Virus record (IMG/VR): IMGVR_UViG_3300032334_001259
Location: 186,001-250,000 of that record
Reading direction: 5' to 3' (one strand)
Length of the DNA: 64,000 bases
Below, one piece after another: positions 26,636 through 59,798 of this stretch. The notes under the pieces were generated by a model, which ran no database searches, was not told the origin of the DNA, and saw only the letters and a list, made by a program, of their open reading frames with translations. The stretch's first letter is position 1. Each line of letters opens with the position of its first letter. Position numbers and translations under genes: made by a program.

Positions 26636-26659
26636 AATTAATCTCCTATCCATATATAC

Positions 26660-26687
26660 ATAATACCACAGAATTATATTATGTCAA
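26660..26687 (-). promoter_or_regulatory. Early promoter TTGACA-16-TATTAT
   Basis: Same architecture as the promoters at 27985, 28278 and 29087. Confidence 0.7.
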
Positions 26688-26690
26688 GAG

Positions 26691-41828: not shown

Positions 41829-42182
41829 TTAAACGCTTTTTGGACGATTTTGACGGTCATGCTTTAATTTAGCAGCAAAGGCATCTGGGGTCAATTTATA
41901 TTTTGCAATAAAAGCATCATGTAAATCTTTTGGGTCAACTTGGAAAGCCACTGATATGTTTTGCATTAAATCATCAATGCTTGCATAATCTATTTGTTCC
42001 ATATCATCTAATTGGCTTCCAAGACGTGCAACAGCACCCATCATATTCTTACCTTCTACACCTCTTACAACAGTGTCATACTTCCAACGTGCTGCCATAA
42101 GACCACGTGCACCAGCACTTATAGGATTGCGTCCTTGAATCGTAGTGCTCATTGCTGCTTCAATAATTTCTTTAACTTTCAT
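41829..42182 (-). CDS. Putative internal head protein
   Basis: Leader MKVKEIIE-A; LHDAFIAKYKLTPD. Confidence 0.55.
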   Translation of the reverse strand: MKVKEIIEAAMSTTIQGRNPISAGARGLMAARWKYDTVVRGVEGKNMMGAVARLGSQLDDMEQIDYASIDDLMQNISVAFQVDPKDLHDAFIAKYKLTPDAFAAKLKHDRQNRPKSV

Positions 42183-43135
42183 TAGGTTGCCATAATTTTT
42201 TTAAGTAATGTGGGAGCAAATAAATTTTTAACTAATTCAGATTTGTAAATTTCAGAAGTCATTTCTTTAAATTTTTTCATTTCATCTACACCAAATTCAA
42301 AAAACCCACTGCATCTATTTTTGCTTTGCTCTACAAATTTTTCACTATCCTTAATAGTTTCTGTTCTTTCAATTAAAGCGGTTTTTTTAGCAGTTTCTTT
42401 AAATAATTTTTGATCATTTTCTGATAGTGAATTCCAAAAATCATTTGATATAACAATAGTTGTTAAAAACAAACTATGATTTGTATTTGTGATAAAAGGT
42501 GTTTTGTGTTTGACTTTATCAAATCTGACCAAAGTTGTTTCACCACCATCAAAATTAATATCTTTCATTCTTTCAAAGTGTGCGGATAAATCATCACCAT
42601 GTTCATCTAAAATCGCATTTGCTCCTAAAATATCATAAACCTTTTTTGTAATTGGGCTTTCTGAACAACTAACTGTTTTACCCTTAATATCATCTATTTT
42701 TTTTAAAGGTTGATTACTTACCATGATACGGAATCCACCGCTGTAAGTAAAAGCTAATCCTCTCATTGCAGTATTTTTACCTAATAATTCTAAAAGATTT
42801 TCTCCTATAGAACCATCAAGAACTCTGGAAGCATGGTCATGGTCTTGAAACAAAAATGGCATATCAAATATATAAAAGTTATTAAATTTTGAACCTATTG
42901 CCGTAGTTTGAAACTGTGCCATTTGAAATTTGTTGTCACGTAATGATTTATAAAAACTTGCACTATGATTATAACTAGGATTAGAAAAAAATTCTTTTCT
43001 AGTTAAAACTTCAATATTGATTCGTCCACTTGTCTCTTTTTCAATTATATTTTTAAAAGTATTTGCTGATCTTAAAAATAGATTAAGAGGTTCATGAGCA
43101 ACAACCCAACGACAATTTATTGAAGTTTCAGTCAT
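42182..43135 (-). CDS. dctP: TRAP transporter solute-binding protein (DctP-like), no signal peptide
   Basis: ETSGRINIEV, FDMPFLF, YSGGFR, FWNSLSENDQKLF; TAAATA at 43153-43158. Confidence 0.8.
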   Translation of the reverse strand: MTETSINCRWVVAHEPLNLFLRSANTFKNIIEKETSGRINIEVLTRKEFFSNPSYNHSASFYKSLRDNKFQMAQFQTTAIGSKFNNFYIFDMPFLFQDHDHASRVLDGSIGENLLELLGKNTAMRGLAFTYSGGFRIMVSNQPLKKIDDIKGKTVSCSESPITKKVYDILGANAILDEHGDDLSAHFERMKDINFDGGETTLVRFDKVKHKTPFITNTNHSLFLTTIVISNDFWNSLSENDQKLFKETAKKTALIERTETIKDSEKFVEQSKNRCSGFFEFGVDEMKKFKEMTSEIYKSELVKNLFAPTLLKKIMAT

Positions 43136-43187
43136 AGTAATTCCTTTTTACCTATTTATGAATAAAAATATGAAATTATATGTTATC

Positions 43188-43595
43188 TTAAACTTTACCA
43201 CTTGGGTCCATAATAGGCGGTAGACCTAACTTATTGGTTTTATTACCAAATTTGGCGGCTTGACGCTGTGTTTCGCCAGGTTTTATATCAACTGTCATGC
43301 TCATAGCATAACGTGGGTCTTTTGCCATCTTTTTATTGCCAGCAACTACGCCTACACCAGCAGATTCACGGTAAACTTTTTCGGCACCAACAGGGTTAAT
43401 CTTAAATCCCCACATCTTTAATTTATATAATAATTCTTCTTCATCTTGTGCAACAAAATCATATTTGTTTGTATAACCATAATAGGTTCCATTAGGACGT
43501 TTTGTTACATATGCAGTTTCGCCTGTGCGTGGGTTATCATATACAGTGGCGTAAGTTGCTTCGTCTAACTGTGAGAATAATTCGTTTAATAACAT
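43188..43595 (-). CDS. Putative internal head protein
   Basis: Start moved to ATG 43595 (TAATG overlap); leader MLLNELFSQLDE-A. Confidence 0.55.
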   Translation of the reverse strand: MLLNELFSQLDEATYATVYDNPRTGETAYVTKRPNGTYYGYTNKYDFVAQDEEELLYKLKMWGFKINPVGAEKVYRESAGVGVVAGNKKMAKDPRYAMSMTVDIKPGETQRQAAKFGNKTNKLGLPPIMDPSGKV

Positions 43596-44239
43596 TACAT
43601 TAAGTCCCATTTTTTAAGAGACCATTTTTTAACCATATCACGTGATAAATTTACTTTGGTTGATATCTCTCTTGCTGTTAAACCTTCATTTTTTAACATC
43701 TGAATAGAATCAAATTGTTCTTTCGTTAAACCACGACGAATCATCGCTCGTTTCTCTATAATTGATTTTTCCCACTTTACCCAAGGTTTTTTCTTACCTT
43801 TATGTGATTCTGATATTTTCTTTTTAGATTCTTCCGAATGAATTTTACCGTGCATTCTTGTATAATTTTTAGCAATGCCTTTTAATGCTCTACTTCTTTT
43901 TACATTTGACTCTTCTGACATAATTATGCCATTATTGCCATCGCCACCTTTTGTAGAATTATATCCATTTTTATAGGTATCAAATTTTTCTATAAGTTCT
44001 ATTTCTTTTTGTTTAGCAACTTCTGCGGAATCAACCAATTCTAATAATTCTATCTTCCACACATCAGTTCCATACTTGTTTATAGCATTGTAAAATTTTC
44101 TATTGTCACGAATTTTTATAGCATCTTTCTTATGCTGTTCAAATCTTTCAAATATGGTATTACCAGTAAAACCAATATATGATTTACCATTTACATTATT
44201 TGTAATTTTATAAACAGAATAGGTTTTTGCAATTACCAT
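43595..44239 (-). mobile_element. Free-standing GIY-YIG homing endonuclease with NUMOD3-type repeats
   Basis: SVYKITNNVNGKSYIG, RFEQH, GYNSTKGG, HSEESKKKIS. Confidence 0.85.
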
Positions 44240-45174
44240 GCACGGCAACTCCAATATCTTGCAGTTGTTCTATCTTTTGCTGTTTTGCAATTGTGTCTGG
44301 CTCTAAAAGACTTTCTGCGTTTTGGATTTGACCGCTTTATTCTCATTTTTTTGTCACCAAAATTTACTTTAATTACTTTGCCTGTTTTTGGATTTTTCAC
44401 GTACACTTTTTTCTTTTTAACATCGCCCTTCATAGGTTTGCCAAGTGGAACTTTACGACCATGATATTCTGCTTCTGCAACGAGTGATTCATGAAGTTCA
44501 TCCATAAAGAAACGAACTTCTTTGTCGCCTTTGTTAAGAACAATATCATCATCGTCTTCGTCAATATCCCAACCCATGTTGCTTAACATTTTTACGGCTT
44601 GGGCATGCTTACCTTCATCACCATGCCACCACATCTTTGCCAAACGTTTTAGAGTTTGGTGATTATCTTGCATAGAAACTACTTCACCTTCTGCTACACT
44701 ACTTTTCTGTGCGATTGCACGTTCTGCAGCTTGGTTGATGTCCTCACGACTTGCGCTATATGGGCTTACATTTAGCGTGGTGATTTCTTCGTATGCAGGC
44801 GTCATTTCATCATCGGTTTTTACAACTTTTTTAAGAAGATGATAATTTGTCTTACGAACATCATCAGACTCATGACCACTTGTTGCAATAAAATAATCAT
44901 CACGATAATGCTTTACATAATTGTTGCCACCAAAATCACGTTCTCGCCAAAGTTTTGCTTCACCAAGATATTTGGTTTCAATTGCGCCTAAACTTTCTAA
45001 TAAACCAAGTAATTTTTCATCACCAAGTAATGTAATACTTTCGTTATCCATTTCCATAATTTCAGTATCTACTTGTAGAATATTACTGAACTCAAGATAG
45101 ACACCATCACCAATGGTTGGACGATCTTCGCTTATGGCTGTAAGTTTTTCAATTAGGGAACGCATATCACTCAT
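44233..45174 (-). CDS. Putative head-packaged polyprotein with basic C-terminal domain
   Basis: Leader ending AISE; C-terminal KVNFG...SFRARHNC...ARYWSC; TAAATA at 45194-45199. Confidence 0.6.
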   Translation of the reverse strand: MSDMRSLIEKLTAISEDRPTIGDGVYLEFSNILQVDTEIMEMDNESITLLGDEKLLGLLESLGAIETKYLGEAKLWRERDFGGNNYVKHYRDDYFIATSGHESDDVRKTNYHLLKKVVKTDDEMTPAYEEITTLNVSPYSASREDINQAAERAIAQKSSVAEGEVVSMQDNHQTLKRLAKMWWHGDEGKHAQAVKMLSNMGWDIDEDDDDIVLNKGDKEVRFFMDELHESLVAEAEYHGRKVPLGKPMKGDVKKKKVYVKNPKTGKVIKVNFGDKKMRIKRSNPKRRKSFRARHNCKTAKDRTTARYWSCRAW

Positions 45175-45196
45175 GTTAAAAATCCTGATATGTTAT

Positions 45197-46147
45197 TTAT
45201 TTTGCTTTGGTGCTTACACGAATTGGTGCTTTACCTGTTCCGCCAGTATCTTTACCACCACGACCTGCTGCATTTTGTGCTTTACGTTTACGAGTAACTG
45301 CACTGCGTTTTTGTGCCGCACTCATTTTACGTGCTTTGGCTGCTGGTACACATTTTGCATAGCCACTCTTGCTGCCGCTTGTTCCGCATGGTGGATGCTT
45401 ACCGCCAACCTTCTTGCCAATATTAACCCACTTGTCTTTAAACCACTTGTGTAGATTGCCCTTGGCTTCTGGTAATACAAGATTTCCGCAATGAATACAA
45501 TAATCAACTTGTTCAAGTAGCACACTCTCGGTAATTGGATCACATGTAAGTTCTGTGCTTTCTAAGGTCATTTCCATAGCGATTTTTTTCTTATATACGT
45601 ATAGTTTGTAACCTGAAGCATCATCGCTAAAAATCTTTTTCTGTTGGACTGGATCAGTTACAGCCTTAAAACCCATCTGCTCAAAGAATTTTGCTGCCCT
45701 ATCATATAACTTGATTCTGCTTGGTTCGTTTGATTTTGCACCCATGACAATTACTTCAGTTTTAGGATGTCTTGCAATAAAGTGATTCAAACAATAGGCA
45801 ACGCCATTGAATATTTTAAAAACAGTATCTCTTTCAGTGCCAGTTGCAGCATGGGTATCAGGTCTGCTCTGCGTTTTATTTTCAAATGCCAATACATAAT
45901 AATTTTCATTATATTCTTTAAATGTGACTTCAATTTTGGTTTTATTAACGGTGAAATCATAATCAGAACCGTAATTATCTGCATACACATCAAAATTTTC
46001 TGGCGCTTTGTTTACGTCGATAAATTCTTCAATTTCTTCGCTTTCGTTCTTGACGCAGTTTGGATACTTCTTTCCAAACATTGTTTTCATGCCTTCTTTA
46101 TGATAGCCTTTCCAACATGCTTCGCCAAGAACATCTTCCATCTTCAT
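45197..46147 (-). CDS. Putative head-packaged polyprotein
   Basis: MKMEDVLGE-ACWKGY...PNCVK; central SRIKLY domain; basic LHKWF...KCVP domain. Confidence 0.6.
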   Translation of the reverse strand: MKMEDVLGEACWKGYHKEGMKTMFGKKYPNCVKNESEEIEEFIDVNKAPENFDVYADNYGSDYDFTVNKTKIEVTFKEYNENYYVLAFENKTQSRPDTHAATGTERDTVFKIFNGVAYCLNHFIARHPKTEVIVMGAKSNEPSRIKLYDRAAKFFEQMGFKAVTDPVQQKKIFSDDASGYKLYVYKKKIAMEMTLESTELTCDPITESVLLEQVDYCIHCGNLVLPEAKGNLHKWFKDKWVNIGKKVGGKHPPCGTSGSKSGYAKCVPAAKARKMSAAQKRSAVTRKRKAQNAAGRGGKDTGGTGKAPIRVSTKAK

Positions 46148-46881
46148 TTGGATTTATTTCCCCAGTTTTTAGCACCAGCCTTGCGGCACTTAACTAACGC
46201 ACCGCTTGCATAAGCACTTGGCCATACTTTATAACGGCTCTTAACTTTGTAATAACAAGCATCTTTCTTTTCATTCATAAGACTTGCTTCATACATTAAT
46301 CCACCACAATGTGGACAACTTTCTTCTACAGCTTCTAACTCATCTGTTGTATCACCAGTAACAGGATATGTCTTGCCACCAACATTGAATGATTTTTTAC
46401 CTGCTTTTATAGCATTCATTCTTGCATCAGTAAAGGCATTGGATTCTTCCATGTCATCGTGTTCAGCATTACCAATGATTTCATTATAATTGTCCATGCA
46501 AAGATAATCATGACTCTTACTCAACTCTATAAGTTTTTCAGCAACATCGTGTAAATCCATATCAGTCTTTGCATCTTCACGTGCATATTCCATGATTCTA
46601 ATAAGCAATGGAACATCCATTGTTACAGTATCTGTAGCATCTGCTTCTGGAATTACTTCAACATTTTCTTGTGGAATTACTTTTGGTTTACGAATAGCAC
46701 TACCTGGTATCATCTTGTCCATTGCAAGTTCAACACCAGCACGTTGTTTTTTGCTTTTACCAGCAGCATGACCCTTCATTAAATTAGGGTTGCGTGATAA
46801 TCGCTTTGTTACATAAGAAGTAAGAGTTTTATTGCGTAGTTCTTCTAAATCTGTCTCAACAATAATATCATTTATACGCAT
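46144..46881 (-). CDS. Putative head-packaged polyprotein
   Basis: MRINDIIVE leader; DVPLLIRIMEYAREDA; C-terminal DACYYKVK...WPSAYASGALVKC. Confidence 0.6.
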   Translation of the reverse strand: MRINDIIVETDLEELRNKTLTSYVTKRLSRNPNLMKGHAAGKSKKQRAGVELAMDKMIPGSAIRKPKVIPQENVEVIPEADATDTVTMDVPLLIRIMEYAREDAKTDMDLHDVAEKLIELSKSHDYLCMDNYNEIIGNAEHDDMEESNAFTDARMNAIKAGKKSFNVGGKTYPVTGDTTDELEAVEESCPHCGGLMYEASLMNEKKDACYYKVKSRYKVWPSAYASGALVKCRKAGAKNWGNKSK

Positions 46882-47753
46882 TAGTCACCACCTACCATTT
46901 TATCACCAGGTGGTCCACTATCTGTACCTTTCCAATAGCCAGTAAATTTTGGACCAGTTTTTTTAGATTCGTTTTTTCTACGTTTCTTTTGCTTATATGT
47001 TCCACCGAATAATGATCCAACACCATTGCGACTTATCATTCCACCTAATGGACTTGAAACAGCAGCAATACCACCTGCACTACTTGCGCCAGCACTTGCA
47101 CTTTCACCAATCACGTGAAAGCCAGCTTGTTGCTTACTTTTAACTTGTGCTTGTGGAACCATAACAGGAATACCCTGAACATTACCATTTGTATCAATTT
47201 TTGCCATCTTTACCATGCCTGGTGTTTGTGTCATACCAGGTGGCTTTTTAGGACCAAGTGTTTTTTGTGGCGTTCCTGTTGTTGTGGGCTGAACTGGCAT
47301 TTCTGCTTCTGTCATTTCACTTGGATAACGCATTTCATAATCAAGATAATCAAAAACACTTTCAATATAATCAGCTGCACGAGTTAGTTTACGTTGAACC
47401 CAACCCTCAAGTCCTTGATTTTCCCCAACATTTTTAAGCATATCATGTAACATGATAGCAAGTTTAGCTGTGCGGTAAAGTTCCTGACGTGCCATTTGAA
47501 CTTCGTGATCTGGATACTGATTATATGTTTGTGGCATAATTTCGCCAGTTGGTTGTGCTTGGCAATCACATTCATCAAGACTCTTAATAGTTTCTGGTAG
47601 TTTAATCATATAACGACCAGTTGGAAGTTTCCAAACAGTGCCGTTGAAACGTTGTAATAGTTTTTCTGCTTCATCGTAATTTACAATTACTGGCTTGCCA
47701 TTTTTAGCAAGAATTTTACCATAAACGTAAGTGTCTTTAATCTGATAATCCAT
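46881..47753 (-). CDS. Putative head/core-associated protein
   Basis: LEGWVQRKLTRAADYI helical domain; several xxE linkers; TAAATA at 47772-47777. Confidence 0.55.
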   Translation of the reverse strand: MDYQIKDTYVYGKILAKNGKPVIVNYDEAEKLLQRFNGTVWKLPTGRYMIKLPETIKSLDECDCQAQPTGEIMPQTYNQYPDHEVQMARQELYRTAKLAIMLHDMLKNVGENQGLEGWVQRKLTRAADYIESVFDYLDYEMRYPSEMTEAEMPVQPTTTGTPQKTLGPKKPPGMTQTPGMVKMAKIDTNGNVQGIPVMVPQAQVKSKQQAGFHVIGESASAGASSAGGIAAVSSPLGGMISRNGVGSLFGGTYKQKKRRKNESKKTGPKFTGYWKGTDSGPPGDKMVGGD

Positions 47754-48090
47754 TGGAAATTTCCTCTGTATTATTTATTTTACTTTCTGTAACAGTAAGG
47801 TTAAGATTTTTGATAGTAATACCATTGAAAGAATTAAATTTAATGTTATTAATATTCATTGATTTAATTTTACATTCTTTATTTTTTAAATTAATAAATT
47901 TTAACGATTTGGGTTCAAACCCTTCATTTTTTACATAAAAAATATCAACGATGCCTTGATTTTGTTGCAAAACAGGCAAACTACGTTCACTTATAAGTTG
48001 ATCTTCAAAATATATTCTATAACATATTTCTTCTTCACCATAATCATATGATTCTGGTACAATTATTAATTTAAATTCAATTTCCGCCAT
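47737..48090 (-). CDS. Hypothetical protein
   Basis: Very AT-rich; N-terminus resembles 59799..60275. Confidence 0.5.
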   Translation of the reverse strand: MAEIEFKLIIVPESYDYGEEEICYRIYFEDQLISERSLPVLQQNQGIVDIFYVKNEGFEPKSLKFINLKNKECKIKSMNINNIKFNSFNGITIKNLNLTVTESKINNTEEISNGLSD

Positions 48091-48359
48091 TATAAAACCT
48101 GTTGCAAACCTTTTAATAATTTATCTTGGTGCAACTTTGCTGTTTTACTTTTACTTTTTTTAATTTTTTGGATTTTTGCGTGAAAGCGGCGTAAATCGCT
48201 GCGAGTGAGTTTTTTATTTTTCTTTGAAAGAAATTCTATAGCTTGGCTTTTTATATTTGTGGATTGTATTTCTAAATTACTGTTTATTTGATACTCTTCC
48301 CAAAGTTGAACGATTTGTTCCCATTGTGCTTGGGAGAGAGCAGTATTGTCGTCAAGCAT
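48090..48359 (-). CDS. Basic hypothetical protein
   Basis: GAGGAG SD before ATG 48359; this start removes the overlap with the nucleotidase gene. Confidence 0.55.
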   Translation of the reverse strand: MLDDNTALSQAQWEQIVQLWEEYQINSNLEIQSTNIKSQAIEFLSKKNKKLTRSDLRRFHAKIQKIKKSKSKTAKLHQDKLLKGLQQVL

Positions 48360-48372
48360 TGTACTCTCCTCA

Positions 48373-48885
48373 TTAATTGTATCTCCCCAATTTTGCATAA
48401 CTGGAGAGTTCTCTTGCAACTTTTCCAAATTCACTGTCATTATACTTGATGCCAATGCCGCCAGCACTTTGCCAACTTGCAATGTTCTTGCCATAATCAT
48501 CTACAAGAATACAAGAATTACCACCCAATGTGGCAAACATTGCTTTATTATGTGTAAGTTCAATGTGGCGTGGTGGCATATCACTAAAGTGCATATTAAC
48601 CCAAGCAACCTTGCCTGGCGCACTACGTGGATCACCTGTTAGCGGTGAACTGCAAATATGATAACTGCCAAACTCTTTAATAACATGTCGCACTAACTGA
48701 CGAGCATGTGGAAGTAACGGTAGGTCAACCCAAAATGTAGGATGGTCACGGACCAACTGTAATTTTGCCTCTGGATTGTCTATATCTTTATAGTGGTCTT
48801 TTTTATCTAATCTGGCCCACTCACCAAAAAAATCAGCAAGAACGCCGTCCATATCAAGATAAACTCGGAATTTTTGGTATGCCAT
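48373..48885 (-). CDS. HAD-family 5'(3')-deoxyribonucleotidase (NT5C-like)
   Basis: YLDMDGVLADF, ICSSP, ILVDD; promoter TTGACA-17-TAGTAT at 48917-48945. Confidence 0.85.
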   Translation of the reverse strand: MAYQKFRVYLDMDGVLADFFGEWARLDKKDHYKDIDNPEAKLQLVRDHPTFWVDLPLLPHARQLVRHVIKEFGSYHICSSPLTGDPRSAPGKVAWVNMHFSDMPPRHIELTHNKAMFATLGGNSCILVDDYGKNIASWQSAGGIGIKYNDSEFGKVARELSSYAKLGRYN

Positions 48886-48948
48886 AGTAATATTTACCTA
48901 ATTTTGCCTATGGTTTATACTACCACGGATTTACAAATCTGTCAAGTC

Positions 48949-51900: not shown

Positions 51901-54900
51901 TGCTTGGTAAAAACTTCGTGCTTGTGTTGCTAATAATTCTGTGCCATCGCTTCGGTTTACAACAACATATGTTCCGCCAGATTGTTGTTGCTGTACTGGC
52001 TGTGCTGATGCACCGCCAACAGTTCTCCATTCCCACCTGCCATTTATAAGACGATTATCATCTGCCCATTGTCTTGCATATTGGTATGCTGCTGCTTGAC
52101 TGTCAGCAGTAAAACGATGAACAACACCGCCTTGCGATAGTATTTCAAATTGTTGTCCTGACTGTGATGCTTGTTGTGTTTCATTAGGTCTAAACAGATT
52201 GTATGAATCAAGTGCTATATTATTTCTATTTGCATATTCACGAGCTGCTGCAATAGCCTCTTGGGTAGTAGTATAAGTTCCTTGTGCAATTACTCTATCA
52301 CCACTACTGGTTCGCATTTGGAATACAGCGCCAGCAGTTTGGTATGGCATTTGCGGAATAGTTGCAGCAGTTTGTGTTTGTCCAACAGTTTGTGCATCTG
52401 TTTCACGGCGTGTCATAAATTGCGGAACATCAATCATTTCACCACTTGGTGCTTGTAGTTGAACACTATCAGGATAACCACCATCACGTGCAATTCTGCG
52501 ACCATAACCACGAGCACGATCCATTACATCAAGTAGTGTGCCAAACATAGTTACTTGACGTGAACCGTTTATAAACAACATAAAGTTTTGTTGTGCGTCT
52601 TGTGGTGTTTGTGTTTGTTGTGGTTCGCTACGGCGTGTTTCGTTGGCTGTAAAAACATTATAATATGTATTAACACCCATATAATTGTGTTTTAATTCAT
52701 AATTATTATAATTTACACCACGACCACGCAACCACCTAAATGCTAAATCAGAAGCATCGTATTTGTTATCTGCACGAACAATCTGCACTGCTAATTCTGT
52801 ATCTTTATAAACTATTTCATAACGATTGCTACCACTGCCAATACCAGTGTCACTTGCAACAAACGCCAGTGGTGGTAGTGCAGGCATTAAACCACTTACA
52901 TACGTAGCATTTTTCAAACGAACCAGCATTACATCTTGTAGATAATAGCCACTGTCACTGCTTGTCCAATTACGTGCATCGTCATAAACTTCATAAGGAT
53001 CATTGCCATAAAACTTTTTAAGAACTGTTCCGTTCTTGGTGCGAACTTCATATTCCTCTACACCAGAACCTTTTTTATCACGACTAATAGCACGTTTACG
53101 CTGTTCATTACGAACATGTGATAACAGTGCAGTCTTTGGAATAGTGCCGCTTACATATTGACTAAAATACTTGATTGTATCTGTATCTTCTTTTGGTGCA
53201 TTAGTTGCTAATAATTTATAAAACTTCTTTGCATATTCTTGCTTTTCTGCTTCTGGATCAATCGCAATACTCAATGCATAAACTGTGCGGTAAAGGGTGT
53301 TTATAACTTTATCTAAATCCATATCTAACCAATTACCGCCAGGACTACGAATCTCAATACGATTATCTTTGGTGTTGATACTGGTAAACTTATCAGTATT
53401 AGTATCGTGAATCATCTTACTAACAGTTTTGTTTAAGTTAGTGCGAATCATACTAATTGCTTGTTCTGCTTTGCCTGGATTACGCTTGATTACAGTGGCT
53501 ACTTTATCTAATGCACTTACTGCATAATTATTACCAAGACGACCGAATGTATCAAGAACATACTTGTCTCCTAAAAATAGTGCCATCTTTACATAATCAA
53601 GATTTTGCAAACTATAACCAGGCAGACTTACATTCATATGCAGACCAGTGGTTTTATTGGTATAAGCATTTCCACTCTTTGCCCACGCTGCAACTTTCTT
53701 TATAACATCTACCATTTGCGGAATAGTTAGTGGTGGACTTACAAACTCCCAACCTTCACCACCACGACCGCTGCTTGCATGCAAACTACTATCTGGTTCA
53801 ACCTTAAAGTAATTAGGTTTTTGGCGTTGGGTGTGATAACCACCACTTACTTGTATATCATAACCTACGGCTTGACTAAAACTACGTGCAGGCGGACCAT
53901 CGCCACGACCACGACTATTATCATAATCTGGTTCTGTCCAGTGCGGCCAATTTATAGTTCCACTAAAATAATTGTGAATGTCACTATATGTATCACCACC
54001 AATAACACTATCTAAAAAGTCTTCTACAAGTGAGCCGTCTTCGCTTGCTTTATCATACCACTTTTCATAGTTTTCACGAGTGAAGCGCATGTAAGCATCA
54101 ATTGGTGGTATTTCAGGAAATAGTTCACCTTGCTTTTCATAATCACGACCATAGGTTTTATCTAACCATACTTGATATCGTGTATCAGTTTGTCCACTTT
54201 CTTGACTATTTGCCCAATTATCAAACGCAATTTTAGCATAAGTTTCATATTCACCAGCAATACTTTCTTGAACTTGTTGTATATCACGGCGAGTATTATG
54301 GTCACCACGGAAGAATTCCATAATTGAATTTTGTAAATCAGTTAGATTATCTGCAAATATGTTTCCATCTTGGTCATAATCTGGTTCGCTGTCAAAGTCT
54401 TCGTATGGATCATAGTCATCGTCATCTTCAAACTCTGTAACGATAAGTTCAAACTCTAAACCAGCACGTGCAAGTGGCAATGCATCAACTGCTTTTTTAA
54501 GTGCAGTAGGACTCATTGCAACTTCATTTAATAATTCTTCTGTAATCAAACTATCGCCAAGCACTACATCTTCAAGCCAAGGAATCTTTGGACTTTGTTG
54601 ATCTCCACGTGGATATTCATCCCATGGAAACTTTGCTACTGCACGGTCAGTAAGAGTAGGACCACCACCAACTGTTCCAAGAATACTTGGTGCGTGTTCG
54701 CTTTGCTTTTGTGGTCCAAGTAAGCGCATAAACTTTACCTTGTCTCTTGGCATTACATAATCATAAGAAAGTTGGTTATCAATTGTTCCATCAATAATTA
54801 TATCTACTGCAATATTTTTGAATCCAAGTGCGGTTTGTGCATATACACGATAAGTCTTTCGCAGATCAGGCAACGTTCCTTGAACAAAGAATGTGACAGT

Positions 54901-57486
54901 TGCTTTTGCAAATCGCACATATCCAAGTTTAAATGCTGCTTCATATCCATCTATACCTTGGCTATGTAGATAACCTTCGTGATATTCTGGTGGAACATAA
55001 ACAACTTTACGATCAGGCAATATCCAACCATGTGTTTCATTTGGGTCAAGTGCTTCTTCAATGCTTTCAGCCTTTTGCATCCACTTACTTTTAATGTATT
55101 CAATTACACCCATAGTATCTTTAATATTATTCTGCTGCATGAATCGCACAATCTTGCGACCATTTTCATAATCAGTATCACCAGGCTTTCGTGAATTGCT
55201 TAATTCTCTACGTAAACCAAAGTCATCACCATCAATATTATAATAACGCAAGTCAAACAATATCTTGCTTGCTTCTTTGCTTAATGTTGAACGATTCTGT
55301 CCAAATAACAATTCAACATAAGGAGCCAAATAACTTTTTCTGCTATATTGCTTACGTGATGGTTGTGGACCTTTAAGGATATTCTTTGCCGCACCAATTG
55401 TAATACTCTTTGCAGTATTTTGTAATCTCCATGCTTCTTCATCGGCATAAAGATATGTTGGAATACCACGCTTTTTTGCAGCAAGTAATACACGGCGCAC
55501 CGCTGGACTTTGGAACTCATGTTGTTCTTTAATTAAAACATGAACACTCATTACTGGTGTAATTGCAATAGTGCCATCACGACTGAATACACGGTCTTCA
55601 CTTTCACGATGACGTGTAGTGCTTTGGTCATTCCAATAATCAATTGGTTTTACTTTATAATTTTGGTTTAACCAACGACCATTCAATACAAACATTACAG
55701 CACTATTACCAACATATTTGTGATAACCACCGCTACGACTGCGTGTAGTGCTTAAAAAGTATGGATAACCTTTTGGTTGTAGTTTATATTCCCAATCACT
55801 GCCAACAGTGTTGCTCAACTTAAACTCACCACTTGTTAATATTTCAGCGGCAGCAGTTGTTCCTGTGTAATGGTATAGAACATCAGTTGCTAATTCTGTT
55901 AGTGGTTCAACGCCTTCATCAAGTTGTGATTGTATACTTTTAACAATTTGTGGTGATGCTTTTCCGCTTGTCCATTCAGTTTCAATACTGCCATCAGGAT
56001 TCATCCAGAATAATGCTGCTTCACCATTGTCAATAGCATCAAGATAACGATCAGCAACATAGAAATTATGATGGAAATCATTTTCTGCAGCTTTTTCATA
56101 TGTATAGGTTGCTAATACATGACCATCACGTGTATCAAATACACCAATGTAAAATGGTTTACCACGGAAACTACCAACATTCTTGTTGGTGCTTTCTTCT
56201 AAATCTTTACGATGACTACGCTTGTAGTATGAACACCAACCATTAGGCGCAATCTTGCCTTTTACCGCACTACAACCATGAGGAGGACGCCACATAGTGC
56301 AGTGGTCGCAACGTTGACCATTGCGAGGCATTGCCTGATACTTTGCTTCGGCTTTGGTTGATTTTTCTGCGGCTTCTTCAACTTTCTTTTGTGCAAGATG
56401 CATTATATCTTTTTTAGGAACAACATAAACATCAATGGTTTTCTTGTTCTCTACATCAATCGCTTTTTTCATACGATTTAAACCATCAGCAACACTTAAA
56501 TGACCATCATCATTTTGTATTACAAGTAGCGGATAACGTGTGTCAGCATTCTGCATACGCTCACGCTGTGCTGCATTATCTTGCCACCAACTTAAATCGT
56601 GTTTAATTTTATCTAATGGAAAATTCTTGTGCAAATATTGTGGTTTAGATTGTGCAAACTTTAATACCGCTTCTACACTAAACTGATTGCCAGCATCATC
56701 GCCAAACTTACTACCGTGAAAGTAATCTTTTGCTTCATACTTTGGTAAACCGTATAAATCTAAATCAACACCGTGTGTAGAACCATAATAGGTATCATCT
56801 ACATTTGGTTTATATGGTTTACGACCAACCTTTACAAGTTTTGGTAAATCATCCCAATCACCACCAATGCCTGGTGCTTCTGTAATGTTTTCTTCAACTG
56901 CTTCGCCTAATCCCAAACCAATACGCACTGCTTGCATAAGTGTTTTGCCATCTACCATGATGTTTTGTGGGACTTGTGTAGCACGTTCAAAAGCATCTGC
57001 ATCACCACTCTTTGCTGCTTCACGTGCATTAGTAGCACTGGTTAGTCGTGGACTTTCAACAAATGTAAGTGGTTCAAATTTATAAAAACCGTGTGCAACT
57101 TCTTTGCCATTATATTGTTCAAGCACTGGACGCATACTTGCCATATCATCTTCGCCAGCAACAAAGGTTGCACTACGGAAACCTTTTTCATAAAGATAAG
57201 CAGCGGCTTGTAGGAATGTTTTAATATTTGGATCTTCTACGATATGACCTTTGGTTTCTGGATATAATGTATAAAGCCAACGTAGTTTTAAATCATATGG
57301 CAGTGGATTTTTTTTCTTGTCTTGTGACTTACTTAAAAATCCTGCCCATGCACCATTCTTTGCACTGGTAATTGTAGTTTGGATTAATCCCTGATGACCA
57401 AAATGTGGTGGATTTAGTCTGCCAAAGAAGAAAGAGATATGTGGTCCGCTTGCTTCTTTTAATGTGCTGTTAATAATTGTCATCAT
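48949..57486 (-). CDS. 2845-aa multidomain polyprotein: HIGH-type nucleotidyltransferase, ParB-like, HiPIP, ART-like, two amidoligase domains and repeat modules
   Basis: GRLNPPHFGH; VADGLNR; CDHC-x8-C-x12-C; YHYT/STT/ESE; two copies of GxExE...EPDSS...ExVSPP...TGxH...IExRSxGG. Confidence 0.8.
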   Translation of the reverse strand: MMTIINSTLKEASGPHISFFFGRLNPPHFGHQGLIQTTITSAKNGAWAGFLSKSQDKKKNPLPYDLKLRWLYTLYPETKGHIVEDPNIKTFLQAAAYLYEKGFRSATFVAGEDDMASMRPVLEQYNGKEVAHGFYKFEPLTFVESPRLTSATNAREAAKSGDADAFERATQVPQNIMVDGKTLMQAVRIGLGLGEAVEENITEAPGIGGDWDDLPKLVKVGRKPYKPNVDDTYYGSTHGVDLDLYGLPKYEAKDYFHGSKFGDDAGNQFSVEAVLKFAQSKPQYLHKNFPLDKIKHDLSWWQDNAAQRERMQNADTRYPLLVIQNDDGHLSVADGLNRMKKAIDVENKKTIDVYVVPKKDIMHLAQKKVEEAAEKSTKAEAKYQAMPRNGQRCDHCTMWRPPHGCSAVKGKIAPNGWCSYYKRSHRKDLEESTNKNVGSFRGKPFYIGVFDTRDGHVLATYTYEKAAENDFHHNFYVADRYLDAIDNGEAALFWMNPDGSIETEWTSGKASPQIVKSIQSQLDEGVEPLTELATDVLYHYTGTTAAAEILTSGEFKLSNTVGSDWEYKLQPKGYPYFLSTTRSRSGGYHKYVGNSAVMFVLNGRWLNQNYKVKPIDYWNDQSTTRHRESEDRVFSRDGTIAITPVMSVHVLIKEQHEFQSPAVRRVLLAAKKRGIPTYLYADEEAWRLQNTAKSITIGAAKNILKGPQPSRKQYSRKSYLAPYVELLFGQNRSTLSKEASKILFDLRYYNIDGDDFGLRRELSNSRKPGDTDYENGRKIVRFMQQNNIKDTMGVIEYIKSKWMQKAESIEEALDPNETHGWILPDRKVVYVPPEYHEGYLHSQGIDGYEAAFKLGYVRFAKATVTFFVQGTLPDLRKTYRVYAQTALGFKNIAVDIIIDGTIDNQLSYDYVMPRDKVKFMRLLGPQKQSEHAPSILGTVGGGPTLTDRAVAKFPWDEYPRGDQQSPKIPWLEDVVLGDSLITEELLNEVAMSPTALKKAVDALPLARAGLEFELIVTEFEDDDDYDPYEDFDSEPDYDQDGNIFADNLTDLQNSIMEFFRGDHNTRRDIQQVQESIAGEYETYAKIAFDNWANSQESGQTDTRYQVWLDKTYGRDYEKQGELFPEIPPIDAYMRFTRENYEKWYDKASEDGSLVEDFLDSVIGGDTYSDIHNYFSGTINWPHWTEPDYDNSRGRGDGPPARSFSQAVGYDIQVSGGYHTQRQKPNYFKVEPDSSLHASSGRGGEGWEFVSPPLTIPQMVDVIKKVAAWAKSGNAYTNKTTGLHMNVSLPGYSLQNLDYVKMALFLGDKYVLDTFGRLGNNYAVSALDKVATVIKRNPGKAEQAISMIRTNLNKTVSKMIHDTNTDKFTSINTKDNRIEIRSPGGNWLDMDLDKVINTLYRTVYALSIAIDPEAEKQEYAKKFYKLLATNAPKEDTDTIKYFSQYVSGTIPKTALLSHVRNEQRKRAISRDKKGSGVEEYEVRTKNGTVLKKFYGNDPYEVYDDARNWTSSDSGYYLQDVMLVRLKNATYVSGLMPALPPLAFVASDTGIGSGSNRYEIVYKDTELAVQIVRADNKYDASDLAFRWLRGRGVNYNNYELKHNYMGVNTYYNVFTANETRRSEPQQTQTPQDAQQNFMLFINGSRQVTMFGTLLDVMDRARGYGRRIARDGGYPDSVQLQAPSGEMIDVPQFMTRRETDAQTVGQTQTAATIPQMPYQTAGAVFQMRTSSGDRVIAQGTYTTTQEAIAAAREYANRNNIALDSYNLFRPNETQQASQSGQQFEILSQGGVVHRFTADSQAAAYQYARQWADDNRLINGRWEWRTVGGASAQPVQQQQSGGTYVVVNRSDGTELLATQARSFYQASQAAQSFAQQRGLSLANIAIRTPNNNNLWDAQGQLIPQPRPQPEQQRQYADWEIQRGYDIAGNTIPPLIIAQHRATPQGETTYNIVGSMGGVYHTFTAASETAARRYAQSWATEHNMGPGYTIVAVPERNESIEESLTESFLAEVKMNPKSLEAFAKSEFAQQMRVGFETEMYVPGLQGEEEDPEPDYDQDEDFPADETYKDRQRMIIDFFTEGDYGNSRRSVERALEAFYENFSDYVSDQYYEYENSDEWKQAIADEVGVDDYSEVTEEQKDEAESSVRENWENENDKENWQDFLRIHEIDTMQGFARYINRETNVDSLDWPYMTDGSSSGDVTYDDLVNSFENATGYSAVESSGYHGTSRGDYWIFEPDSSLDSPEDFEDGGVELVSPPMLLDDALEALNNVFTWAKRNRYYTNRTTGFHIGVSVPDQTMANINHLKLILLLGDKYVLDRFERLNSRWTKSMFDQAYKATETRDFRKSLPKILDDARAGLLDQTNREVNKIISGTKGDRYVSVNIKSNYIEFRSAGGNYFEKYDEIRNTMLRYVRAMAAAADPEDSKQEYHKKFYKLIVDSVKKDSSTVDIFAKYVTGDIDKEELVRQVQAVRKSREPVKPIGQGKITAKIETKLGDEVVEVHGEQLYEMIKLAYDWLNERNMDTQAYLLKFPYFNIYVTTIYMQGNGLKNREYSRLGLYPNQANTDEIEFEAVKNLIPNVSREDVKNYLNVIGYNYSDNNIASLYGEIIKIERNGLDGKPNAEQVYNTLAYRIEDYDDHIIARFDPAKYTQDQVAEIADYYANAFDNNMIVYRGNRRLHWGSRNARQAIGKQDINHIVVVGSGKIEFYVVSDTNNFVFVRVRGDSEESALANLNNGGYRNIANNISNGNGPYHLVTPTDYKTGVRKPKPQPKPQPQRSNVIVDRIGRANASKVFALYRDTSVDRFIEVGADTPTEAYEILVKHYKEAGGQALLDTFTREYETGRLSLREV

Positions 57487-57488
57487 AT

Positions 57489-57515
57489 AATCCAGATAAA
57501 ATATTTATCTGGATT
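57489..57515 (-). promoter_or_regulatory. Late promoter TAAATA inside a 12-bp inverted repeat that covers the polyprotein RBS
   Basis: AATCCAGATAAA-3 nt-TTTATCTGGATT immediately before ATG 57486/57483. Confidence 0.65.
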
Positions 57516-57916
57516 CATTTAGAACGATTTTTACTATAGTAGCCATTCTTAATTGCTCTTATTGTTTTAAGAGCATGGTATCTTTGTTTTAAATCACCCT
57601 TTTTCTTATATTCTGCGCTTTTAAAGTGTGGATTAGCGTCAAGTTCTTTGTGTTGTCTTAATAAATCTTCTTCTGTATCGTTATCATATTCATGTGGTCT
57701 GTATGTTACAACTTGATATGGGAAATGTATTCCCTTGTTCATTGTTGCAAGATTTTGTTCTACCCAATCTGCACCAATACGATCAGCTTCATCTTGAGAA
57801 TCTGCACTAAAAGTATCAACTGTTCTGTATGAACGTTGATTGTATGCATTTGGAAATAATAATTGTACGGCATATGTTTGTTGGGTATCTTCGCCAATTA
57901 TTTCACTATAACGCAT
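57515..57916 (-). CDS. Putative internal head protein carrying one copy of the polyprotein repeat module
   Basis: Start moved to ATG 57916; leader MRYSEIIGE; TFSADSQDEADRIGADW; TAAATA at 57936-57941. Confidence 0.55.
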   Translation of the reverse strand: MRYSEIIGEDTQQTYAVQLLFPNAYNQRSYRTVDTFSADSQDEADRIGADWVEQNLATMNKGIHFPYQVVTYRPHEYDNDTEEDLLRQHKELDANPHFKSAEYKKKGDLKQRYHALKTIRAIKNGYYSKNRSK

Positions 57917-57941
57917 CTTATAATCCTTCAAGTATTATTTA

Positions 57942-59081
57942 TTAGGTTGGTGTCCAACGATGTCTTGGAACCAATTTAACATTAGGTTCACCAGCTTTAC
58001 CATAAGCAACATAGCCCTCACCACCAGGCTCACCTTTTGTAGTTTGTGTAATGTCACTTAGTTCACTGTCAATTTGTTCAATAATATTATTCTTGATAGC
58101 ACGTAGATTTTCTAATACATTAAATGTAGCAAGGAATCCACGACTATTCTTGTTTACCCATTCAGTAATCTTATTCTGCATAGGAACACTTTGGCGACTG
58201 CTTGGTAACCATTCTAAAAACTTGTTAGCAAGTCCAGTTGTAATACCACTACGTGCCATTTGGTTGTTAAAATTATATAATACTTGCTTAAATCCAGACA
58301 TCTTCATAGCTGCAAGATTCTGGTCATTTAAGAAATTATCAATAGCAATCTTATTTGTGGCAACATACTTCTGTAAATTAGCAAGTGCAGTTGTATCTAT
58401 TTTTGGTTGTGATTGGGCATAACGTGGACCTAATACAATCAAGCCAGCAGTTTTATTAAATGCTGTAAAATCATTTATAGGTTGTTGCTCATCATCACTT
58501 AAACCAAACTCTGGGAAGTAAGCATGACCAACAGCTGCTGCTGTGCTTTTTGCAATACGTTGTCCAAGTTCACTATTTGCCTTAACACTGTATGTTACAT
58601 TGTTTGGTGTAAATGTGTAAGCACCGTCTTTAAGTGGTGGACGATTCATATAAAGTAAATCAGCATATACATAACCACGAAATTCTTTCGGTGTAGCTGC
58701 TTCAAATAGCGGCCAAAGGCTTGCAAATTGTGTAGCAAATGCTTGTCTTTGCTTGATTTCTTCTGGTGTTTCTGCTTTACCAGTTTGCATAATAAAACGT
58801 GCAAGGTCACCTGCACTTTGTGATTTACCATCTATGGTTCGTTTTAACCAACCGTTGTGACCAACCATGATGAATTTACCATCAGGTTCACGTCCCCAAT
58901 ATACTTGTGGTTTGCCATCCCATTTCCAACGAATATTTTGCTGTGGATTTTTGGCAATTTCTGCAAGTTTGTTTATTGCAGTAGTTGCACCCAAACTACC
59001 ACTTATAAGAACCAAGTCTTCAATATGTTGGAAAGCACGACCAACTTTTGGTGCTTCGGTAAGGATTTGGTTTATAAACAT
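57942..59081 (-). CDS. DUF6267-like protein with KxDG ligase/nucleotidyltransferase-like motif
   Basis: HIEDL, KWDGKP, YADLLY, GEGYV, KLVPR; leader MFINQILTE-A. Confidence 0.6.
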   Translation of the reverse strand: MFINQILTEAPKVGRAFQHIEDLVLISGSLGATTAINKLAEIAKNPQQNIRWKWDGKPQVYWGREPDGKFIMVGHNGWLKRTIDGKSQSAGDLARFIMQTGKAETPEEIKQRQAFATQFASLWPLFEAATPKEFRGYVYADLLYMNRPPLKDGAYTFTPNNVTYSVKANSELGQRIAKSTAAAVGHAYFPEFGLSDDEQQPINDFTAFNKTAGLIVLGPRYAQSQPKIDTTALANLQKYVATNKIAIDNFLNDQNLAAMKMSGFKQVLYNFNNQMARSGITTGLANKFLEWLPSSRQSVPMQNKITEWVNKNSRGFLATFNVLENLRAIKNNIIEQIDSELSDITQTTKGEPGGEGYVAYGKAGEPNVKLVPRHRWTPT

Positions 59082-59722: not shown

Positions 59723-59798
59723 TGCTGTGTTCCCTATAAACATAGAGTAGGTAGGGCTGCAACCCGTGACCTACACTATTATTTATAATTTAATTATA

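What the first reader, a model, noticed from the sequence alone, without database searches (positions are those of the whole stretch)
41829..59081. Head-cargo system: late genes share a capsid-targeting-like leader and prohead-protease-type sites that split them into modules
Seen: eight otherwise unrelated ORFs start with a similar 8-16 aa leader ending in Glu: MKVKEIIE, MLLNELFSQLDE, MSDMRSLIEKLTAISE, MKMEDVLGE, MRINDIIVE, MMTIINSTLKE, MRYSEIIGE and MFINQILTE. Most lie behind TAAATA cores. Inside these proteins, (L/I/V/M)-x-E followed by A/S/V sits at apparent domain borders (LGE-A, VAE-A, LPE-A, VEE-S, IGE-S). Established: T4 internal proteins carry a roughly 10-aa capsid-targeting sequence (MKTYQEFIAE type), which prohead protease gp21 removes by cutting after (L/I)-x-E. 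Inference: a 17-kb cassette of polyproteins is loaded into the prohead, cut into many small enzymes and basic peptides, and possibly injected with the DNA.
Basis: partly seen in the sequence, partly recalled or inferred. Interest (0 to 1): 0.85.

Follow-up and report, generated by a model that had tools for sequence, protein, structure and literature searches.

The report
Leader-tagged head-cargo polyproteins in jumbo phage
A freshwater jumbo phage carries a cluster of late genes whose products all begin with a T4-style "send me into the capsid" peptide and are built from modules joined by T4-style protease cutting sites, so the phage very probably loads a kit of enzymes into its head, cuts it into pieces there and delivers it with its DNA.

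Summary
All eight ORFs start with a 8-16 aa leader ending in hydrophobic-x-Glu, 9 of 13 cluster ORFs against 2 of 60 elsewhere in the window (p=4e-7), and the leaders match those read from T4 itself (ipII/III, alt, gp22, gp24). Comparative data give the strongest support. The leaders are kept in every orthologue family in about 60 related contigs. The 2845-aa ORF is split in at least 9 relatives exactly where it carries an internal leader copy (..LLNE|VAMSP). Modules gained or lost among relatives sit exactly between x-x-Glu joints. In one relative a fusion reduces a leader to just VNE|A before the same mature N-terminus. The joint Glu residues are invariant and lie in low-confidence linkers of an AlphaFold model. 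Sister contigs encode a T4-type prohead protease (Peptidase_S77) and a capsid protein with the homologous YLAE|S site. A leader-bearing homologue of the amidoligase module (Atu_ph07 gp196) was found by others in purified virions. The modules include NadD-like, DarT-like ADP-ribosyltransferase, ParB/Srx-like and amidoligase folds. Packaging, cleavage and injection remain inferred. This is a new variant of known kinds: T4 internal proteins, polyvalent proteins and phiKZ inner-body processing.

The parts
57942..59081 (-). g379, DUF6267 protein with a ligase/capping-enzyme-like KWDG motif. The leader MFINQILTE|A is at 59055-59081.
   Evidence: The leader is a disordered N-terminal extension (pLDDT<50 for residues 1-16) that the cyanophage P-HM1 homologue lacks. 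It is kept in 13 of 13 full-length relatives.
57515..57916 (-). g133, 133-aa protein of unknown function. The leader MRYSEIIGE|D is at 57890-57916.
48949..57486 (-). g2845, a 2845-aa polyprotein. The leader MMTIINSTLKE|A is at 57454-57486. Modules: M1 NadD-like 56878-57453; M2 ParB/Srx-like 56374-56877; M3 Cys4 HIPIP-like 56194-56373; M4 55915-56193; M5 DarT-like ART 55054-55914; M6 54523-55053; M7 amidoligase 53053-54522; M8 DUF2188-like repeats 51496-53052; M9 amidoligase 50002-51468; M10 48952-50001.
54523..54564 (-). Internal leader copy in g2845 (residues 975-988, ..SLITEELLNE|VAMSP). It corresponds to the N-terminus MSDKDLILEEILNE|VNMSP of a separate ORF in relatives.
   Evidence: The same junction opens Atu_ph07 gp196 and RsoM2USA_26.
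51469..51516 (-). Second internal leader and cluster of joints (residues 1991-2006, ..SIEE|SLTE|SFLAE|VKMNP) before the second amidoligase module.
46144..46881 (-). g245. The leader MRINDIIVE|T is at 46855-46881. Joints lie at E79, E146 and E187. The C-terminal 60 aa are a basic Cys-containing module widespread in phages.
45197..46147 (-). g316. The leader MKMEDVLGE|A is at 46121-46147. It holds DUF6934 as a 151-157-aa insert module and, after E227, a basic DUF5872-like tail.
44233..45174 (-). g313. The leader MSDMRSLIEKLTAISE|D is at 45127-45174. There is an 87-aa insert after E72 and a basic C-terminal module after E234.
43188..43595 (-). g135. The leader MLLNELFSQLDE|A is at 43560-43595. 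A 66-aa module is inserted between LDE| and VYRE|, and a basic tail follows.
41829..42182 (-). g117. The leader MKVKEIIE|A is at 42159-42182. The predicted mature N-terminus AAMSTTIQGR is the same in a relative where the protein is fused behind another module through VNE|A.
46881..47753 (-). g290, a conserved cluster member without a leader. It has an internal IGE|S site and its own ATAAATA motif.
   Evidence: 0 of 8 true orthologue N-termini have a leader; the ninth N-terminus and sole regex hit, MDYEMRYP.., starts inside the protein.
57502..57508 (-). ATAAATA late-promoter-like motif before g2845. The same motif lies at 57936-57942 (g133), 45194-45200 (g313), 47772-47778 (g290), 43153-43159 (DctP) and 59780-59786 (endonuclease gene).
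   Evidence: 12 copies in the window against 35.7 expected. All are on the sense strand just upstream of ORFs, and 4 stand before tail-fibre genes.
43595..44254 (-). GIY-YIG/NUMOD3 homing endonuclease gene, a passenger and not cargo. A second one lies at 59081-59743.
42182..43135 (-). DctP-family solute-binding protein gene. It is a passenger without a leader.
48373..48885 (-). NT5C-type 5'-nucleotidase gene. It has no leader here, but some relatives have a leader-like extension (MRIDE|VV).

Best explanation
The cluster encodes head-internal cargo of a roughly 338-kb T4-related (Rak2/Atu_ph07-like) jumbo phage. The genes are transcribed from late promoters together with the structural genes. 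A short N-terminal leader ending in hydrophobic-x-Glu takes each product into the assembling prohead core, as the T4 capsid-targeting sequence does. The T4-type prohead serine protease (Peptidase_S77) then cuts after that Glu and after the same motif at every module joint. This releases separate enzymes (NadD-like adenylyltransferase, ParB/Srx-like, DarT-like ADP-ribosyltransferase, two amidoligases, a ligase-like DUF6267 protein) and small basic peptides that stay in the head with the DNA. Shown here: the leaders, the joints, their conservation, the coincidence of joints with module borders, the late-promoter motifs, the protease gene and capsid-protein site in sister genomes, and the fold assignments. 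Inferred: targeting, cleavage, retention in the virion and ejection into the host.
For: The leaders are the same type as T4 ipII/ipIII, alt, gp22, gp24, gp67 and gp68. They are enriched in the cluster and conserved in orthologue families. Melnitz phage has a syntenic leader-bearing cluster and also encodes a gp21 protease and a gp23 with FLSE|A. Cyanophage homologues lack the extension. The giant ORF is split in at least 9 relatives at the internal leader. All 16 flanks of 8 module insertions end in Glu, 13 of them with [LIVMF] at P3. Large indels in the 18-sequence alignment fall on sites 203, 371, 431, 524 and 811 (p about 0.004). E195, E199, E371 and E431 are invariant. All joint sites lie in pLDDT<50 linkers, whereas the six other [LIVMF]xE sites lie in folded parts. 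The L144 fusion keeps only VNE|A before the same mature N-terminus. Peptidase_S77 is 33% identical to T4 gp21, and a capsid protein with YLAE|S is present in sister contigs. Atu_ph07 gp196, with the leader ..KKLTE|LKMNSS, was detected in virions with 14 peptides. ATAAATA motifs are shared with tail-fibre genes. A small residue after Glu is twice as frequent as in control proteins. DarT, NadD and Srx folds were found.
Against: There is no proteomic or N-terminal sequence evidence for this phage or its close relatives. The protease and capsid genes were found in sister contigs reached by contig walking, not in the window or, as exact copies, on the 338-kb scaffold. The Atu_ph07 virions were only PEG-purified, and 131 proteins were listed, including a topoisomerase, so contamination is possible. 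The overall [LIVMF]xE density is not raised. The leader expression has a background of about 9% in Melnitz. The AlphaFold model is weak (mean pLDDT 50.7), so location in a linker has little statistical power. Some module borders (250, 278, 973) have no canonical site. A 512-residue stretch of g2845 (1479-1990) has no site at all.
Confidence: 0.7

Rival explanations
1. The proteins are taken into the prohead and cut as proposed, but they act as scaffold or core components that are degraded and expelled before DNA packaging, like T4 gp22, gp67 and gp68. They are not retained or injected cargo.
For: T4 core proteins carry the same leaders. The head module of the lineage has acidic leader-bearing core proteins (p74, p282, the scaffold). 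Several cluster proteins have acidic, helical, low-complexity parts.
Against: The modules are enzyme folds (NadD, DarT-like, amidoligase, ligase-like) with conserved catalytic motifs. That is hard to reconcile with disposable scaffolding. Atu_ph07 gp196 was found in mature virions. A dedicated scaffold gene exists elsewhere.
Confidence: 0.1
2. The leader and the x-x-Glu joints are conserved for a non-proteolytic reason, for example as flexible linker and helix-cap motifs, or as microhomology that promotes module shuffling. On this reading the proteins work uncut in the cytoplasm late in infection.
For: No cleavage has been observed. Module exchange does happen precisely at these joints. Cyanophage homologues work without a leader.
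Against: The motif equals the known T4 gp21 site and the homologous capsid-protein maturation site in the same lineage. The Glu is invariant while neighbouring residues vary. The same predicted mature N-terminus follows either a full leader or a bare VNE|. Microhomology would conserve DNA, not one amino acid with a variable P2.
Confidence: 0.12
3. The joints are cut, but by another protease in the cytoplasm, so that this is a polyprotein strategy unrelated to the capsid. Candidates are the DUF2201 metallopeptidase/VWA with its MoxR ATPase (25373-27928) or a Clp system.
For: A metallopeptidase-like gene and a ClpA-like gene are in or next to the window.
Against: Cleavage after Glu with a hydrophobic P3 is the signature of S77 prohead proteases. 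The leaders resemble capsid-targeting sequences. A homologue is virion-associated.
Confidence: 0.05
4. It is a chance resemblance of N-termini in an AT-rich genome.
For: The loose expression matches about 9% of Melnitz ORFs.
Against: Enrichment has p=3.6e-7. The leaders are conserved across families at 55-98% identity. Internal homologues of the leaders exist.
Confidence: 0.01

Closest known systems
T4 internal proteins IPI-III and Alt, with the capsid-targeting sequence and gp21 processing
   Same: The leader is about 10 aa long, ends in L/I-x-Glu and is followed by a small residue. Expression is late. The phage has a T4-type S77 prohead protease. The cargo includes an ADP-ribosyltransferase. 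The proteins are otherwise unrelated and share only the leader.
   Different: There is no sequence homology to IPI-III or Alt. The cargo here is built as multi-module polyproteins of up to 2845 aa (more than 3178 aa in a relative), with the cleavage motif repeated at each joint. The ART is DarT-like, not Alt/VIP2-like. The host phage is a 338-kb jumbo phage.
Polyvalent proteins of phages and conjugative elements (Iyer et al. 2017, PMC5512222)
   Same: One polypeptide combines many unrelated enzymatic domains (ART, ParB-like, nucleotidyltransferase). It is predicted to travel with the DNA and act early.
   Different: Described polyvalent proteins are thought to be released by embedded peptidases, mostly zincin-like. 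Here no peptidase domain was found, and processing would be in trans, by the prohead protease, at a short conserved joint.
phiKZ / 201phi2-1 / SPN3US inner-body and ejection proteins cut by the prohead protease
   Same: These are jumbo phages in which many head proteins are cut at several sites after Glu by the prohead protease, with propeptides removed (abstracts; my own knowledge for the motif).
   Different: Their motif has a small residue (S/A/G) at P3 (own knowledge), whereas here P3 is hydrophobic as in T4. The proteins are unrelated, and the phage group differs (T4-like replication, Rak2/Atu_ph07 relatives).
Phage P1 Dar system (DarB, DdrB and others)
   Same: Large anti-defence enzymes are packaged in the head and injected, with some processing before packaging.
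   Different: There is no leader/joint grammar of this kind, the packaging hierarchy is different, and there is no homology.

Membership tests
T4-type capsid-targeted, gp21-processed head proteins | An N-terminal leader of about 10 aa ending in (L/I)-x-Glu | tested here: met
   Eight ORFs carry it. It was compared directly with the T4 leaders read from NC_000866.
T4-type capsid-targeted, gp21-processed head proteins | The phage encodes a T4 gp21-type prohead protease (Peptidase_S77) | tested here: met
   The gene is not in the window. It was found with portal, scaffold and Gp23 in sister contigs reached by walking, and it is 33% identical to T4 gp21 with E=2e-19. The exact protein is not on the 338-kb scaffold, so the feature is met for the lineage and inferred for this genome.
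T4-type capsid-targeted, gp21-processed head proteins | Bona fide protease substrates of the same phage carry the same motif | tested here: met
   The lineage capsid protein has ..KKYLAE|SASAG at the position of T4 ..FLTE|A. The scaffold and small core proteins start with MFE|ALKPLLE|S and MFLSE|M.
T4-type capsid-targeted, gp21-processed head proteins | Late expression with the head genes | tested here: met
   Counter-selected ATAAATA motifs stand before cluster genes and tail-fibre genes. This is a promoter inference; no RNA data were used.
T4-type capsid-targeted, gp21-processed head proteins | The protein is physically in the prohead or virion and is cut after the leader | not testable with these tools
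   The only evidence is indirect: the Atu_ph07 gp196 homologue is in a published virion proteome.
T4-type capsid-targeted, gp21-processed head proteins | Homology to IPI, IPII, IPIII or Alt | tested here: not met
   No Pfam or PHROG hit to these families was found. T4 internal proteins are themselves mutually unrelated apart from the leader.
Polyvalent proteins (Iyer et al. 2017) | Two to 15 unrelated conflict-type domains in one polypeptide | tested here: met
   NadD-like, ParB/Srx-like, HIPIP-like, DarT-like, two Amidoligase_2 and DUF2188-like repeats.
Polyvalent proteins (Iyer et al. 2017) | An embedded peptidase domain for self-processing (present in many members, not all) | tested here: not met
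   No peptidase family was detected in g2845 at E<=1.
Polyvalent proteins (Iyer et al. 2017) | Late or virion gene context | tested here: inconclusive
   Late-promoter motifs are present. The cluster, however, lies between the ClpA/DnaJ genes and DNA polymerase, not next to the head genes. In Atu_ph07 the amidoligase gene is next to the portal gene.
phiKZ-type inner-body proteins | Cleavage motif S/A/G-x-Glu | tested here: not met
   P3 is L/I/V/M/F in 13 of 16 insert flanks and in all eight leaders.
DarT-like ADP-ribosyltransferases (module M5) | ART fold similar to DarT | tested here: inconclusive
   Foldseek against Thermus DarT gives E=1e-4 and TM about 0.47 from a model region with pLDDT 60-88. 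There is no Pfam or PDB sequence hit. The Atlas lead is weak. Catalytic residues were not mapped.
ATP-dependent ligase / capping-enzyme nucleotidyltransferases (g379) | KxDG lysine motif and the later motifs on the ligase fold | tested here: inconclusive
   KWDG, EG(Y/F)V and KxVxR are invariant from this phage to cyanophage. The model is good (pLDDT 80), but Foldseek gives only weak ligase hits (E>=0.4).

The most novel reading that the evidence does not exclude
The phage uses a plug-and-play cargo grammar. Any protein becomes head cargo by gaining a leader of about 10 aa, or by being inserted between hydrophobic-x-Glu joints of an existing cargo polyprotein, and the prohead protease then unpacks the string inside the capsid. 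This would explain polyproteins of 2845 to more than 3178 aa whose modules are shuffled, fused and split freely among relatives. It would also deliver an NAD-centred toolkit at the moment of DNA entry: a NadD-like NAD synthesis enzyme, a DarT-like ADP-ribosyltransferase, amidoligases and a ligase-like enzyme. The same grammar appears to run from 340-490-kb Rak2/Atu_ph07-type jumbo phages to the 141-kb marine phage Melnitz.
Probability: 0.5. Interest if true: 0.8.

Novelty: new variant of a known kind. Interest (0 to 1): 0.72.

Why it matters
If true, the cargo of uncultured T4-related and jumbo phages could be read from sequence alone. Leader plus joints would predict which proteins travel in the capsid and where they are cut. 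That would open a large, unannotated set of first-minute host-takeover and anti-defence enzymes to study. It links two separate concepts, T4 capsid targeting and polyvalent proteins, through a trans-acting protease mechanism. It shows how cytoplasmic enzymes are recruited as cargo: the DUF6267 and cytidylyltransferase-like genes lack the leader in cyanophages. It also suggests a natural design rule for packaging foreign proteins in phage heads. It is directly testable in two cultured phages, Melnitz and Atu_ph07, partly by re-searching mass spectra that already exist.

Tried and rejected
- **Phage collection:** Megablast of the region found nothing.
- **PDB sequence searches:** Searches with module M5, g379 and M1 gave nothing useful.
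- **Pfam on separate modules:** This added only weak hits.
- **ESM Atlas for M5:** It gave only a weak DarT/PARP lead.
- **Fishing for this phage's own head genes in IMG/VR:** I used capsid proteins of Melnitz, Atu_ph07 plus RsoM2USA, and a freshwater relative as queries. All three attempts failed because the families are too large.
- **Walking to the right of the window:** This found replication and auxiliary genes only.
- **Walking to the left:** The 4898-aa gene blocked the way until three exact-pattern scans bridged it. Two exact-protein look-ups failed on the way.
- **Atu_ph07 region syntenic with the cluster (gp283-291):** It does not hold a leader cluster, so synteny with that phage is limited to the amidoligase gene near the portal.
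- I repeated it without them.
- **ORF 47737-48090 (MAEIEFKLIIVPE|S):** I considered it a ninth leader and rejected it, because the site is not kept in relatives.
- **ORF 61798-62139 (..RALIE|K):** I rejected it as well, because relatives have ALINRG at that place.
- **Overall enrichment of [LIVMF]xE:** I tested for it and found none.

Full report
**What the window is.** The window carries a family-B DNA polymerase, an RNase H-type exonuclease and tail-fibre genes. By my reading of the translations it also holds a sliding-clamp-like ORF, thymidylate synthase and DHFR. The polymerase is closest (44-49% identity) to those of Rak2/Atu_ph07-type jumbo phages. The same DNA lies on two independently assembled contigs of 338,435 and 338,367 bp. 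The source is therefore an uncultured jumbo phage of about 338 kb, and its relatives come mostly from metagenomes that, by my recollection of the sample numbers, are freshwater. Nothing in the phage collection is close at the DNA level.

**The observation.** With a fixed expression (Met, 3-16 residues, [LIVMF]-x-Glu, then A/S/T/D/G), 9 of 13 ORFs of the cluster match against 2 of 60 elsewhere in the window (p=3.6e-7). I read the T4 leaders from the T4 record rather than from memory: ipII/ipIII MKTYQEFIAE|A, alt MELITELFDE|D, gp22 MLKEQLIAE|A, gp24 MAKINELLRE|S, gp67 ..LFAE|A and gp68 ..LIPE|A. The window's leaders are of the same length and form. The role of such a leader in T4 as a capsid-targeting sequence shared by otherwise unrelated internal proteins is established (PMC3012670).

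**Conservation.**
- I fetched about 60 related loci at 55-98% protein identity.
- The leader is kept in every family: g379 in 13 of 13 full-length copies, g316 in 6 of 6, g313 in 8 of 8, g135 in 8 of 8, g117 in 7 of 7, and the N-terminus of the giant protein in 13 of 15.
- P3 stays hydrophobic, P2 varies freely and the Glu is fixed.
- The 290-aa gene without a leader lacks it in all 8 true orthologue N-termini; the one regex match in that family starts inside the protein. It serves as an internal control.
- The marine phage Melnitz (Kyanoviridae) has a syntenic block of leader-bearing genes (DUF6267, a 650-aa cytidylyltransferase-like polyprotein and others). Melnitz also encodes a gp21 protease and a gp23 with FLSE|A.
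- The cyanophage P-HM1 homologues of the DUF6267 and cytidylyltransferase genes lack the extension, so the leader is an add-on of 10-13 residues.
- In the AlphaFold model of g379 (mean pLDDT 80), residues 1-16 are the only disordered part apart from the last four.

**Internal sites are former or potential N-termini.**
- In at least nine relatives the giant ORF is two genes. The first ends near residue 971. The second starts MSDKDLILEEILNE|VNMSP, which aligns with residues 975-993 of the window protein..SLITEELLNE|VAMSP.
- A second such element..SFLAE|VKMNP, precedes the second amidoligase module.
- The separate amidoligase genes of Atu_ph07 (gp196) and RsoM2USA (gene 26) start with ..KKLTE|LKMNSS and ..KLSE|LKMDMS, so the junction is old.
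- Conversely, in locus L144 the small g135-type and g117-type proteins are fused. There the g117 leader is reduced to ..KVNE| before the unchanged AAMSTTIQGR.
- A small basic module (..SPAQQAAIAI..KKRGKKPK) occurs after a leader, inside a protein, or at a C-terminus. It is always preceded by hydrophobic-x-Glu|Ala, in Melnitz as well.

**Joints coincide with module borders.**
- Eight independent module insertions or replacements among relatives were read at their flanks. After allowing the 1-2-residue ambiguity of gap placement, all 16 flanks end in Glu, and 13 have [LIVMF] at P3. Examples are NITE|[133 aa ..PIGE]|APGIGG in L007 and MEE|[41 aa ..VEE]|S in g245.
- In an 18-sequence alignment of residues 1-1000, large indels fall at 202/203, 370/371, 432, 523-526 and 809. 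That is 5 of 11 borders within 3 residues of a site, against 11% expected (p about 0.004).
- E195, E199, E371 and E431 are invariant, and E11 and E531 nearly so.
- In the AlphaFold model of this part (weak, mean pLDDT 50.7), all joint sites lie in segments with pLDDT below 50. The six other [LIVMF]xE sites (84, 100, 123, 144, 654, 796) lie inside folded domains.
- The overall density of [LIVMF]xE is the same as in control proteins (1.76 against 1.70 per 100 aa). A small residue after the Glu is twice as frequent (38% against 20% of sites, p=7e-4).

**The protease.** It is not in the window. Walking right found replication and chaperone genes. Walking left across a 4898-aa fibre gene took three exact-pattern scans and then exact-protein look-ups. 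That route led through gp25, gp46/47-like and baseplate genes to a head module in sister contigs. The module holds Portal_T4, a 74-aa and a 282-aa core protein, Peptidase_S77 (207 aa), a 365-aa scaffold and Gp23. The protease is 33% identical to T4 gp21 (E=2e-19) and shares the GE.DHP and GVSSRG motifs. The capsid protein has ..KKYLAE|SASAG where T4 has ..FLTE|A. The core and scaffold proteins start MFLSE|M, MRSQYEQLIE|Y and MFE|ALKPLLE|S. The exact protease sequence occurs in the metagenomes that hold the 98%-identical relatives, but not on the 338-kb scaffold. The gene is therefore shown for the lineage and inferred for this genome.

**Timing.** ATAAATA occurs 12 times in the window against 35.7 expected. 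Every copy is on the sense strand, most of them 15-20 nt before a start codon. Four stand before tail-fibre genes and six are in or at the cluster. This fits a T4-type late promoter core that is counter-selected elsewhere. Four of the eight leader genes have their own motif (one as CTAAATA), and the other four overlap the stop codon of the gene before them.

**Experimental anchor.** In the published virion proteome of Atu_ph07, gp196 was identified with 14 peptides and 30% coverage, next to the portal gp198 (PMC6102473, supplementary table). The preparation was PEG-purified and the list is long (131 proteins), so this is supportive but not conclusive.

**What the cargo is.** Foldseek on the model of residues 1-1000 finds three folds:
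- DarT ADP-ribosyltransferases (E=1e-4) for the 525-811 module;
- NaMN/NMN adenylyltransferases (E about 1e-3) for the first module, which cyanophage records annotate as cytidyltransferase;
- sulfiredoxin/ParB (E=0.025) for the second module.

Pfam adds a HIPIP-like Cys4 module, two Amidoligase_2 domains and DUF2188-like repeats. g379 has invariant KWDG, EG(Y/F)V and KxVxR motifs typical of ligases and capping enzymes, but only weak structural hits. The C-terminal modules of g313, g316 and g245 are short, strongly basic and widespread in phages.

**Mechanism and comparison.** The best reading is T4-style capsid targeting and prohead-protease processing, applied to polyvalent, module-shuffled polyproteins. 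It shares the leader, the site, the protease type and even an ART cargo with T4. With the polyvalent proteins of Iyer et al. it shares the multi-domain architecture, but it lacks their embedded peptidases. With phiKZ-type phages it shares multi-site processing of head proteins after Glu, but the P3 preference differs. My literature searches found no description of this leader/joint grammar in Rak2-like or Melnitz-type phages; absence from the held library is not proof of novelty. I rate it a new variant of a known kind. Confidence is about 0.7 that the signals are prohead-targeting and processing signals, and lower (about 0.45) that the products are injected.

Noticed in passing
window 2734, 4342, 6013, 7651 (+); 29771, 43153, 45194, 47772, 57502, 57936, 59780, 61812 (-): ATAAATA is three-fold depleted (12 copies against 35.7 expected). 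It occurs only on the sense strand, just upstream of ORFs. This fits a late-promoter core that is counter-selected everywhere else.
   Followed up: partly
window 8-2707 (+) and upstream (L054): The first ORF of the window is the C-terminal 899 aa of a 4898-aa fibre-like protein (faint FG-GAP and CBM_5_12 hits). The genome is about 338 kb in two independent assemblies.
   Followed up: partly
window 43595-44254 and 59081-59743 (-): Two GIY-YIG/NUMOD3 homing-endonuclease genes are lodged between leader genes. They are present or absent at these places in relatives, and in L140 one appears fused in frame behind a copy of the g135 leader.
   Followed up: partly
window 31712-32149 (-): A 145-aa protein outside the cluster has a leader-like start (..MKIFNKIIE|T) and a Lys/Pro-rich basic stretch. 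It may be a further head-internal protein.
   Followed up: no
window 48373-48885 (-); L144, L149, L152, L156: The NT5C-type nucleotidase has no leader in the window but has an N-terminal extension ..MRIDE|VV in several relatives. A gene may be caught gaining or losing cargo status.
   Followed up: partly
window 39527-40177 (+): A 216-aa Ala/Val/Glu-rich repetitive ORF is the only + strand ORF inside a long - strand block. It lies in a locally GC-rich stretch. Its function is unknown.
   Followed up: no
window 25373-27928 (-): A MoxR-type AAA ATPase sits next to a DUF2201 metallopeptidase/VWA protein (a CobS/CobT-like pair). Local GC is 43% against a window mean of 36%.
   Followed up: no
window 42182-43135 (-): A DctP-family TRAP solute-binding protein gene (Pfam E=2e-38) with its own ATAAATA lies inside the cluster. 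It is an auxiliary metabolic gene expressed late.
   Followed up: no
window 62827-63957 and beyond (L005, L216): A ClpA/B-like ATPase (744 aa) and a DnaJ gene lie just upstream of the cluster, as in Atu_ph07 (gp292/293). A role in handling very large cargo proteins is conceivable but was not tested.
   Followed up: no
L001 (Melnitz 65855-66523): A 222-aa Melnitz ORF far from the cluster starts MKTFAELQE|G, very like the T4 IP leader.
   Followed up: no
g2845 residues 1479-1990 (window 51517-53052): Seven short DUF2188-like repeats are separated by Gln-rich linkers. There is not a single [LIVMF]xE site in 512 residues, so this part would stay in one piece.
   Followed up: no
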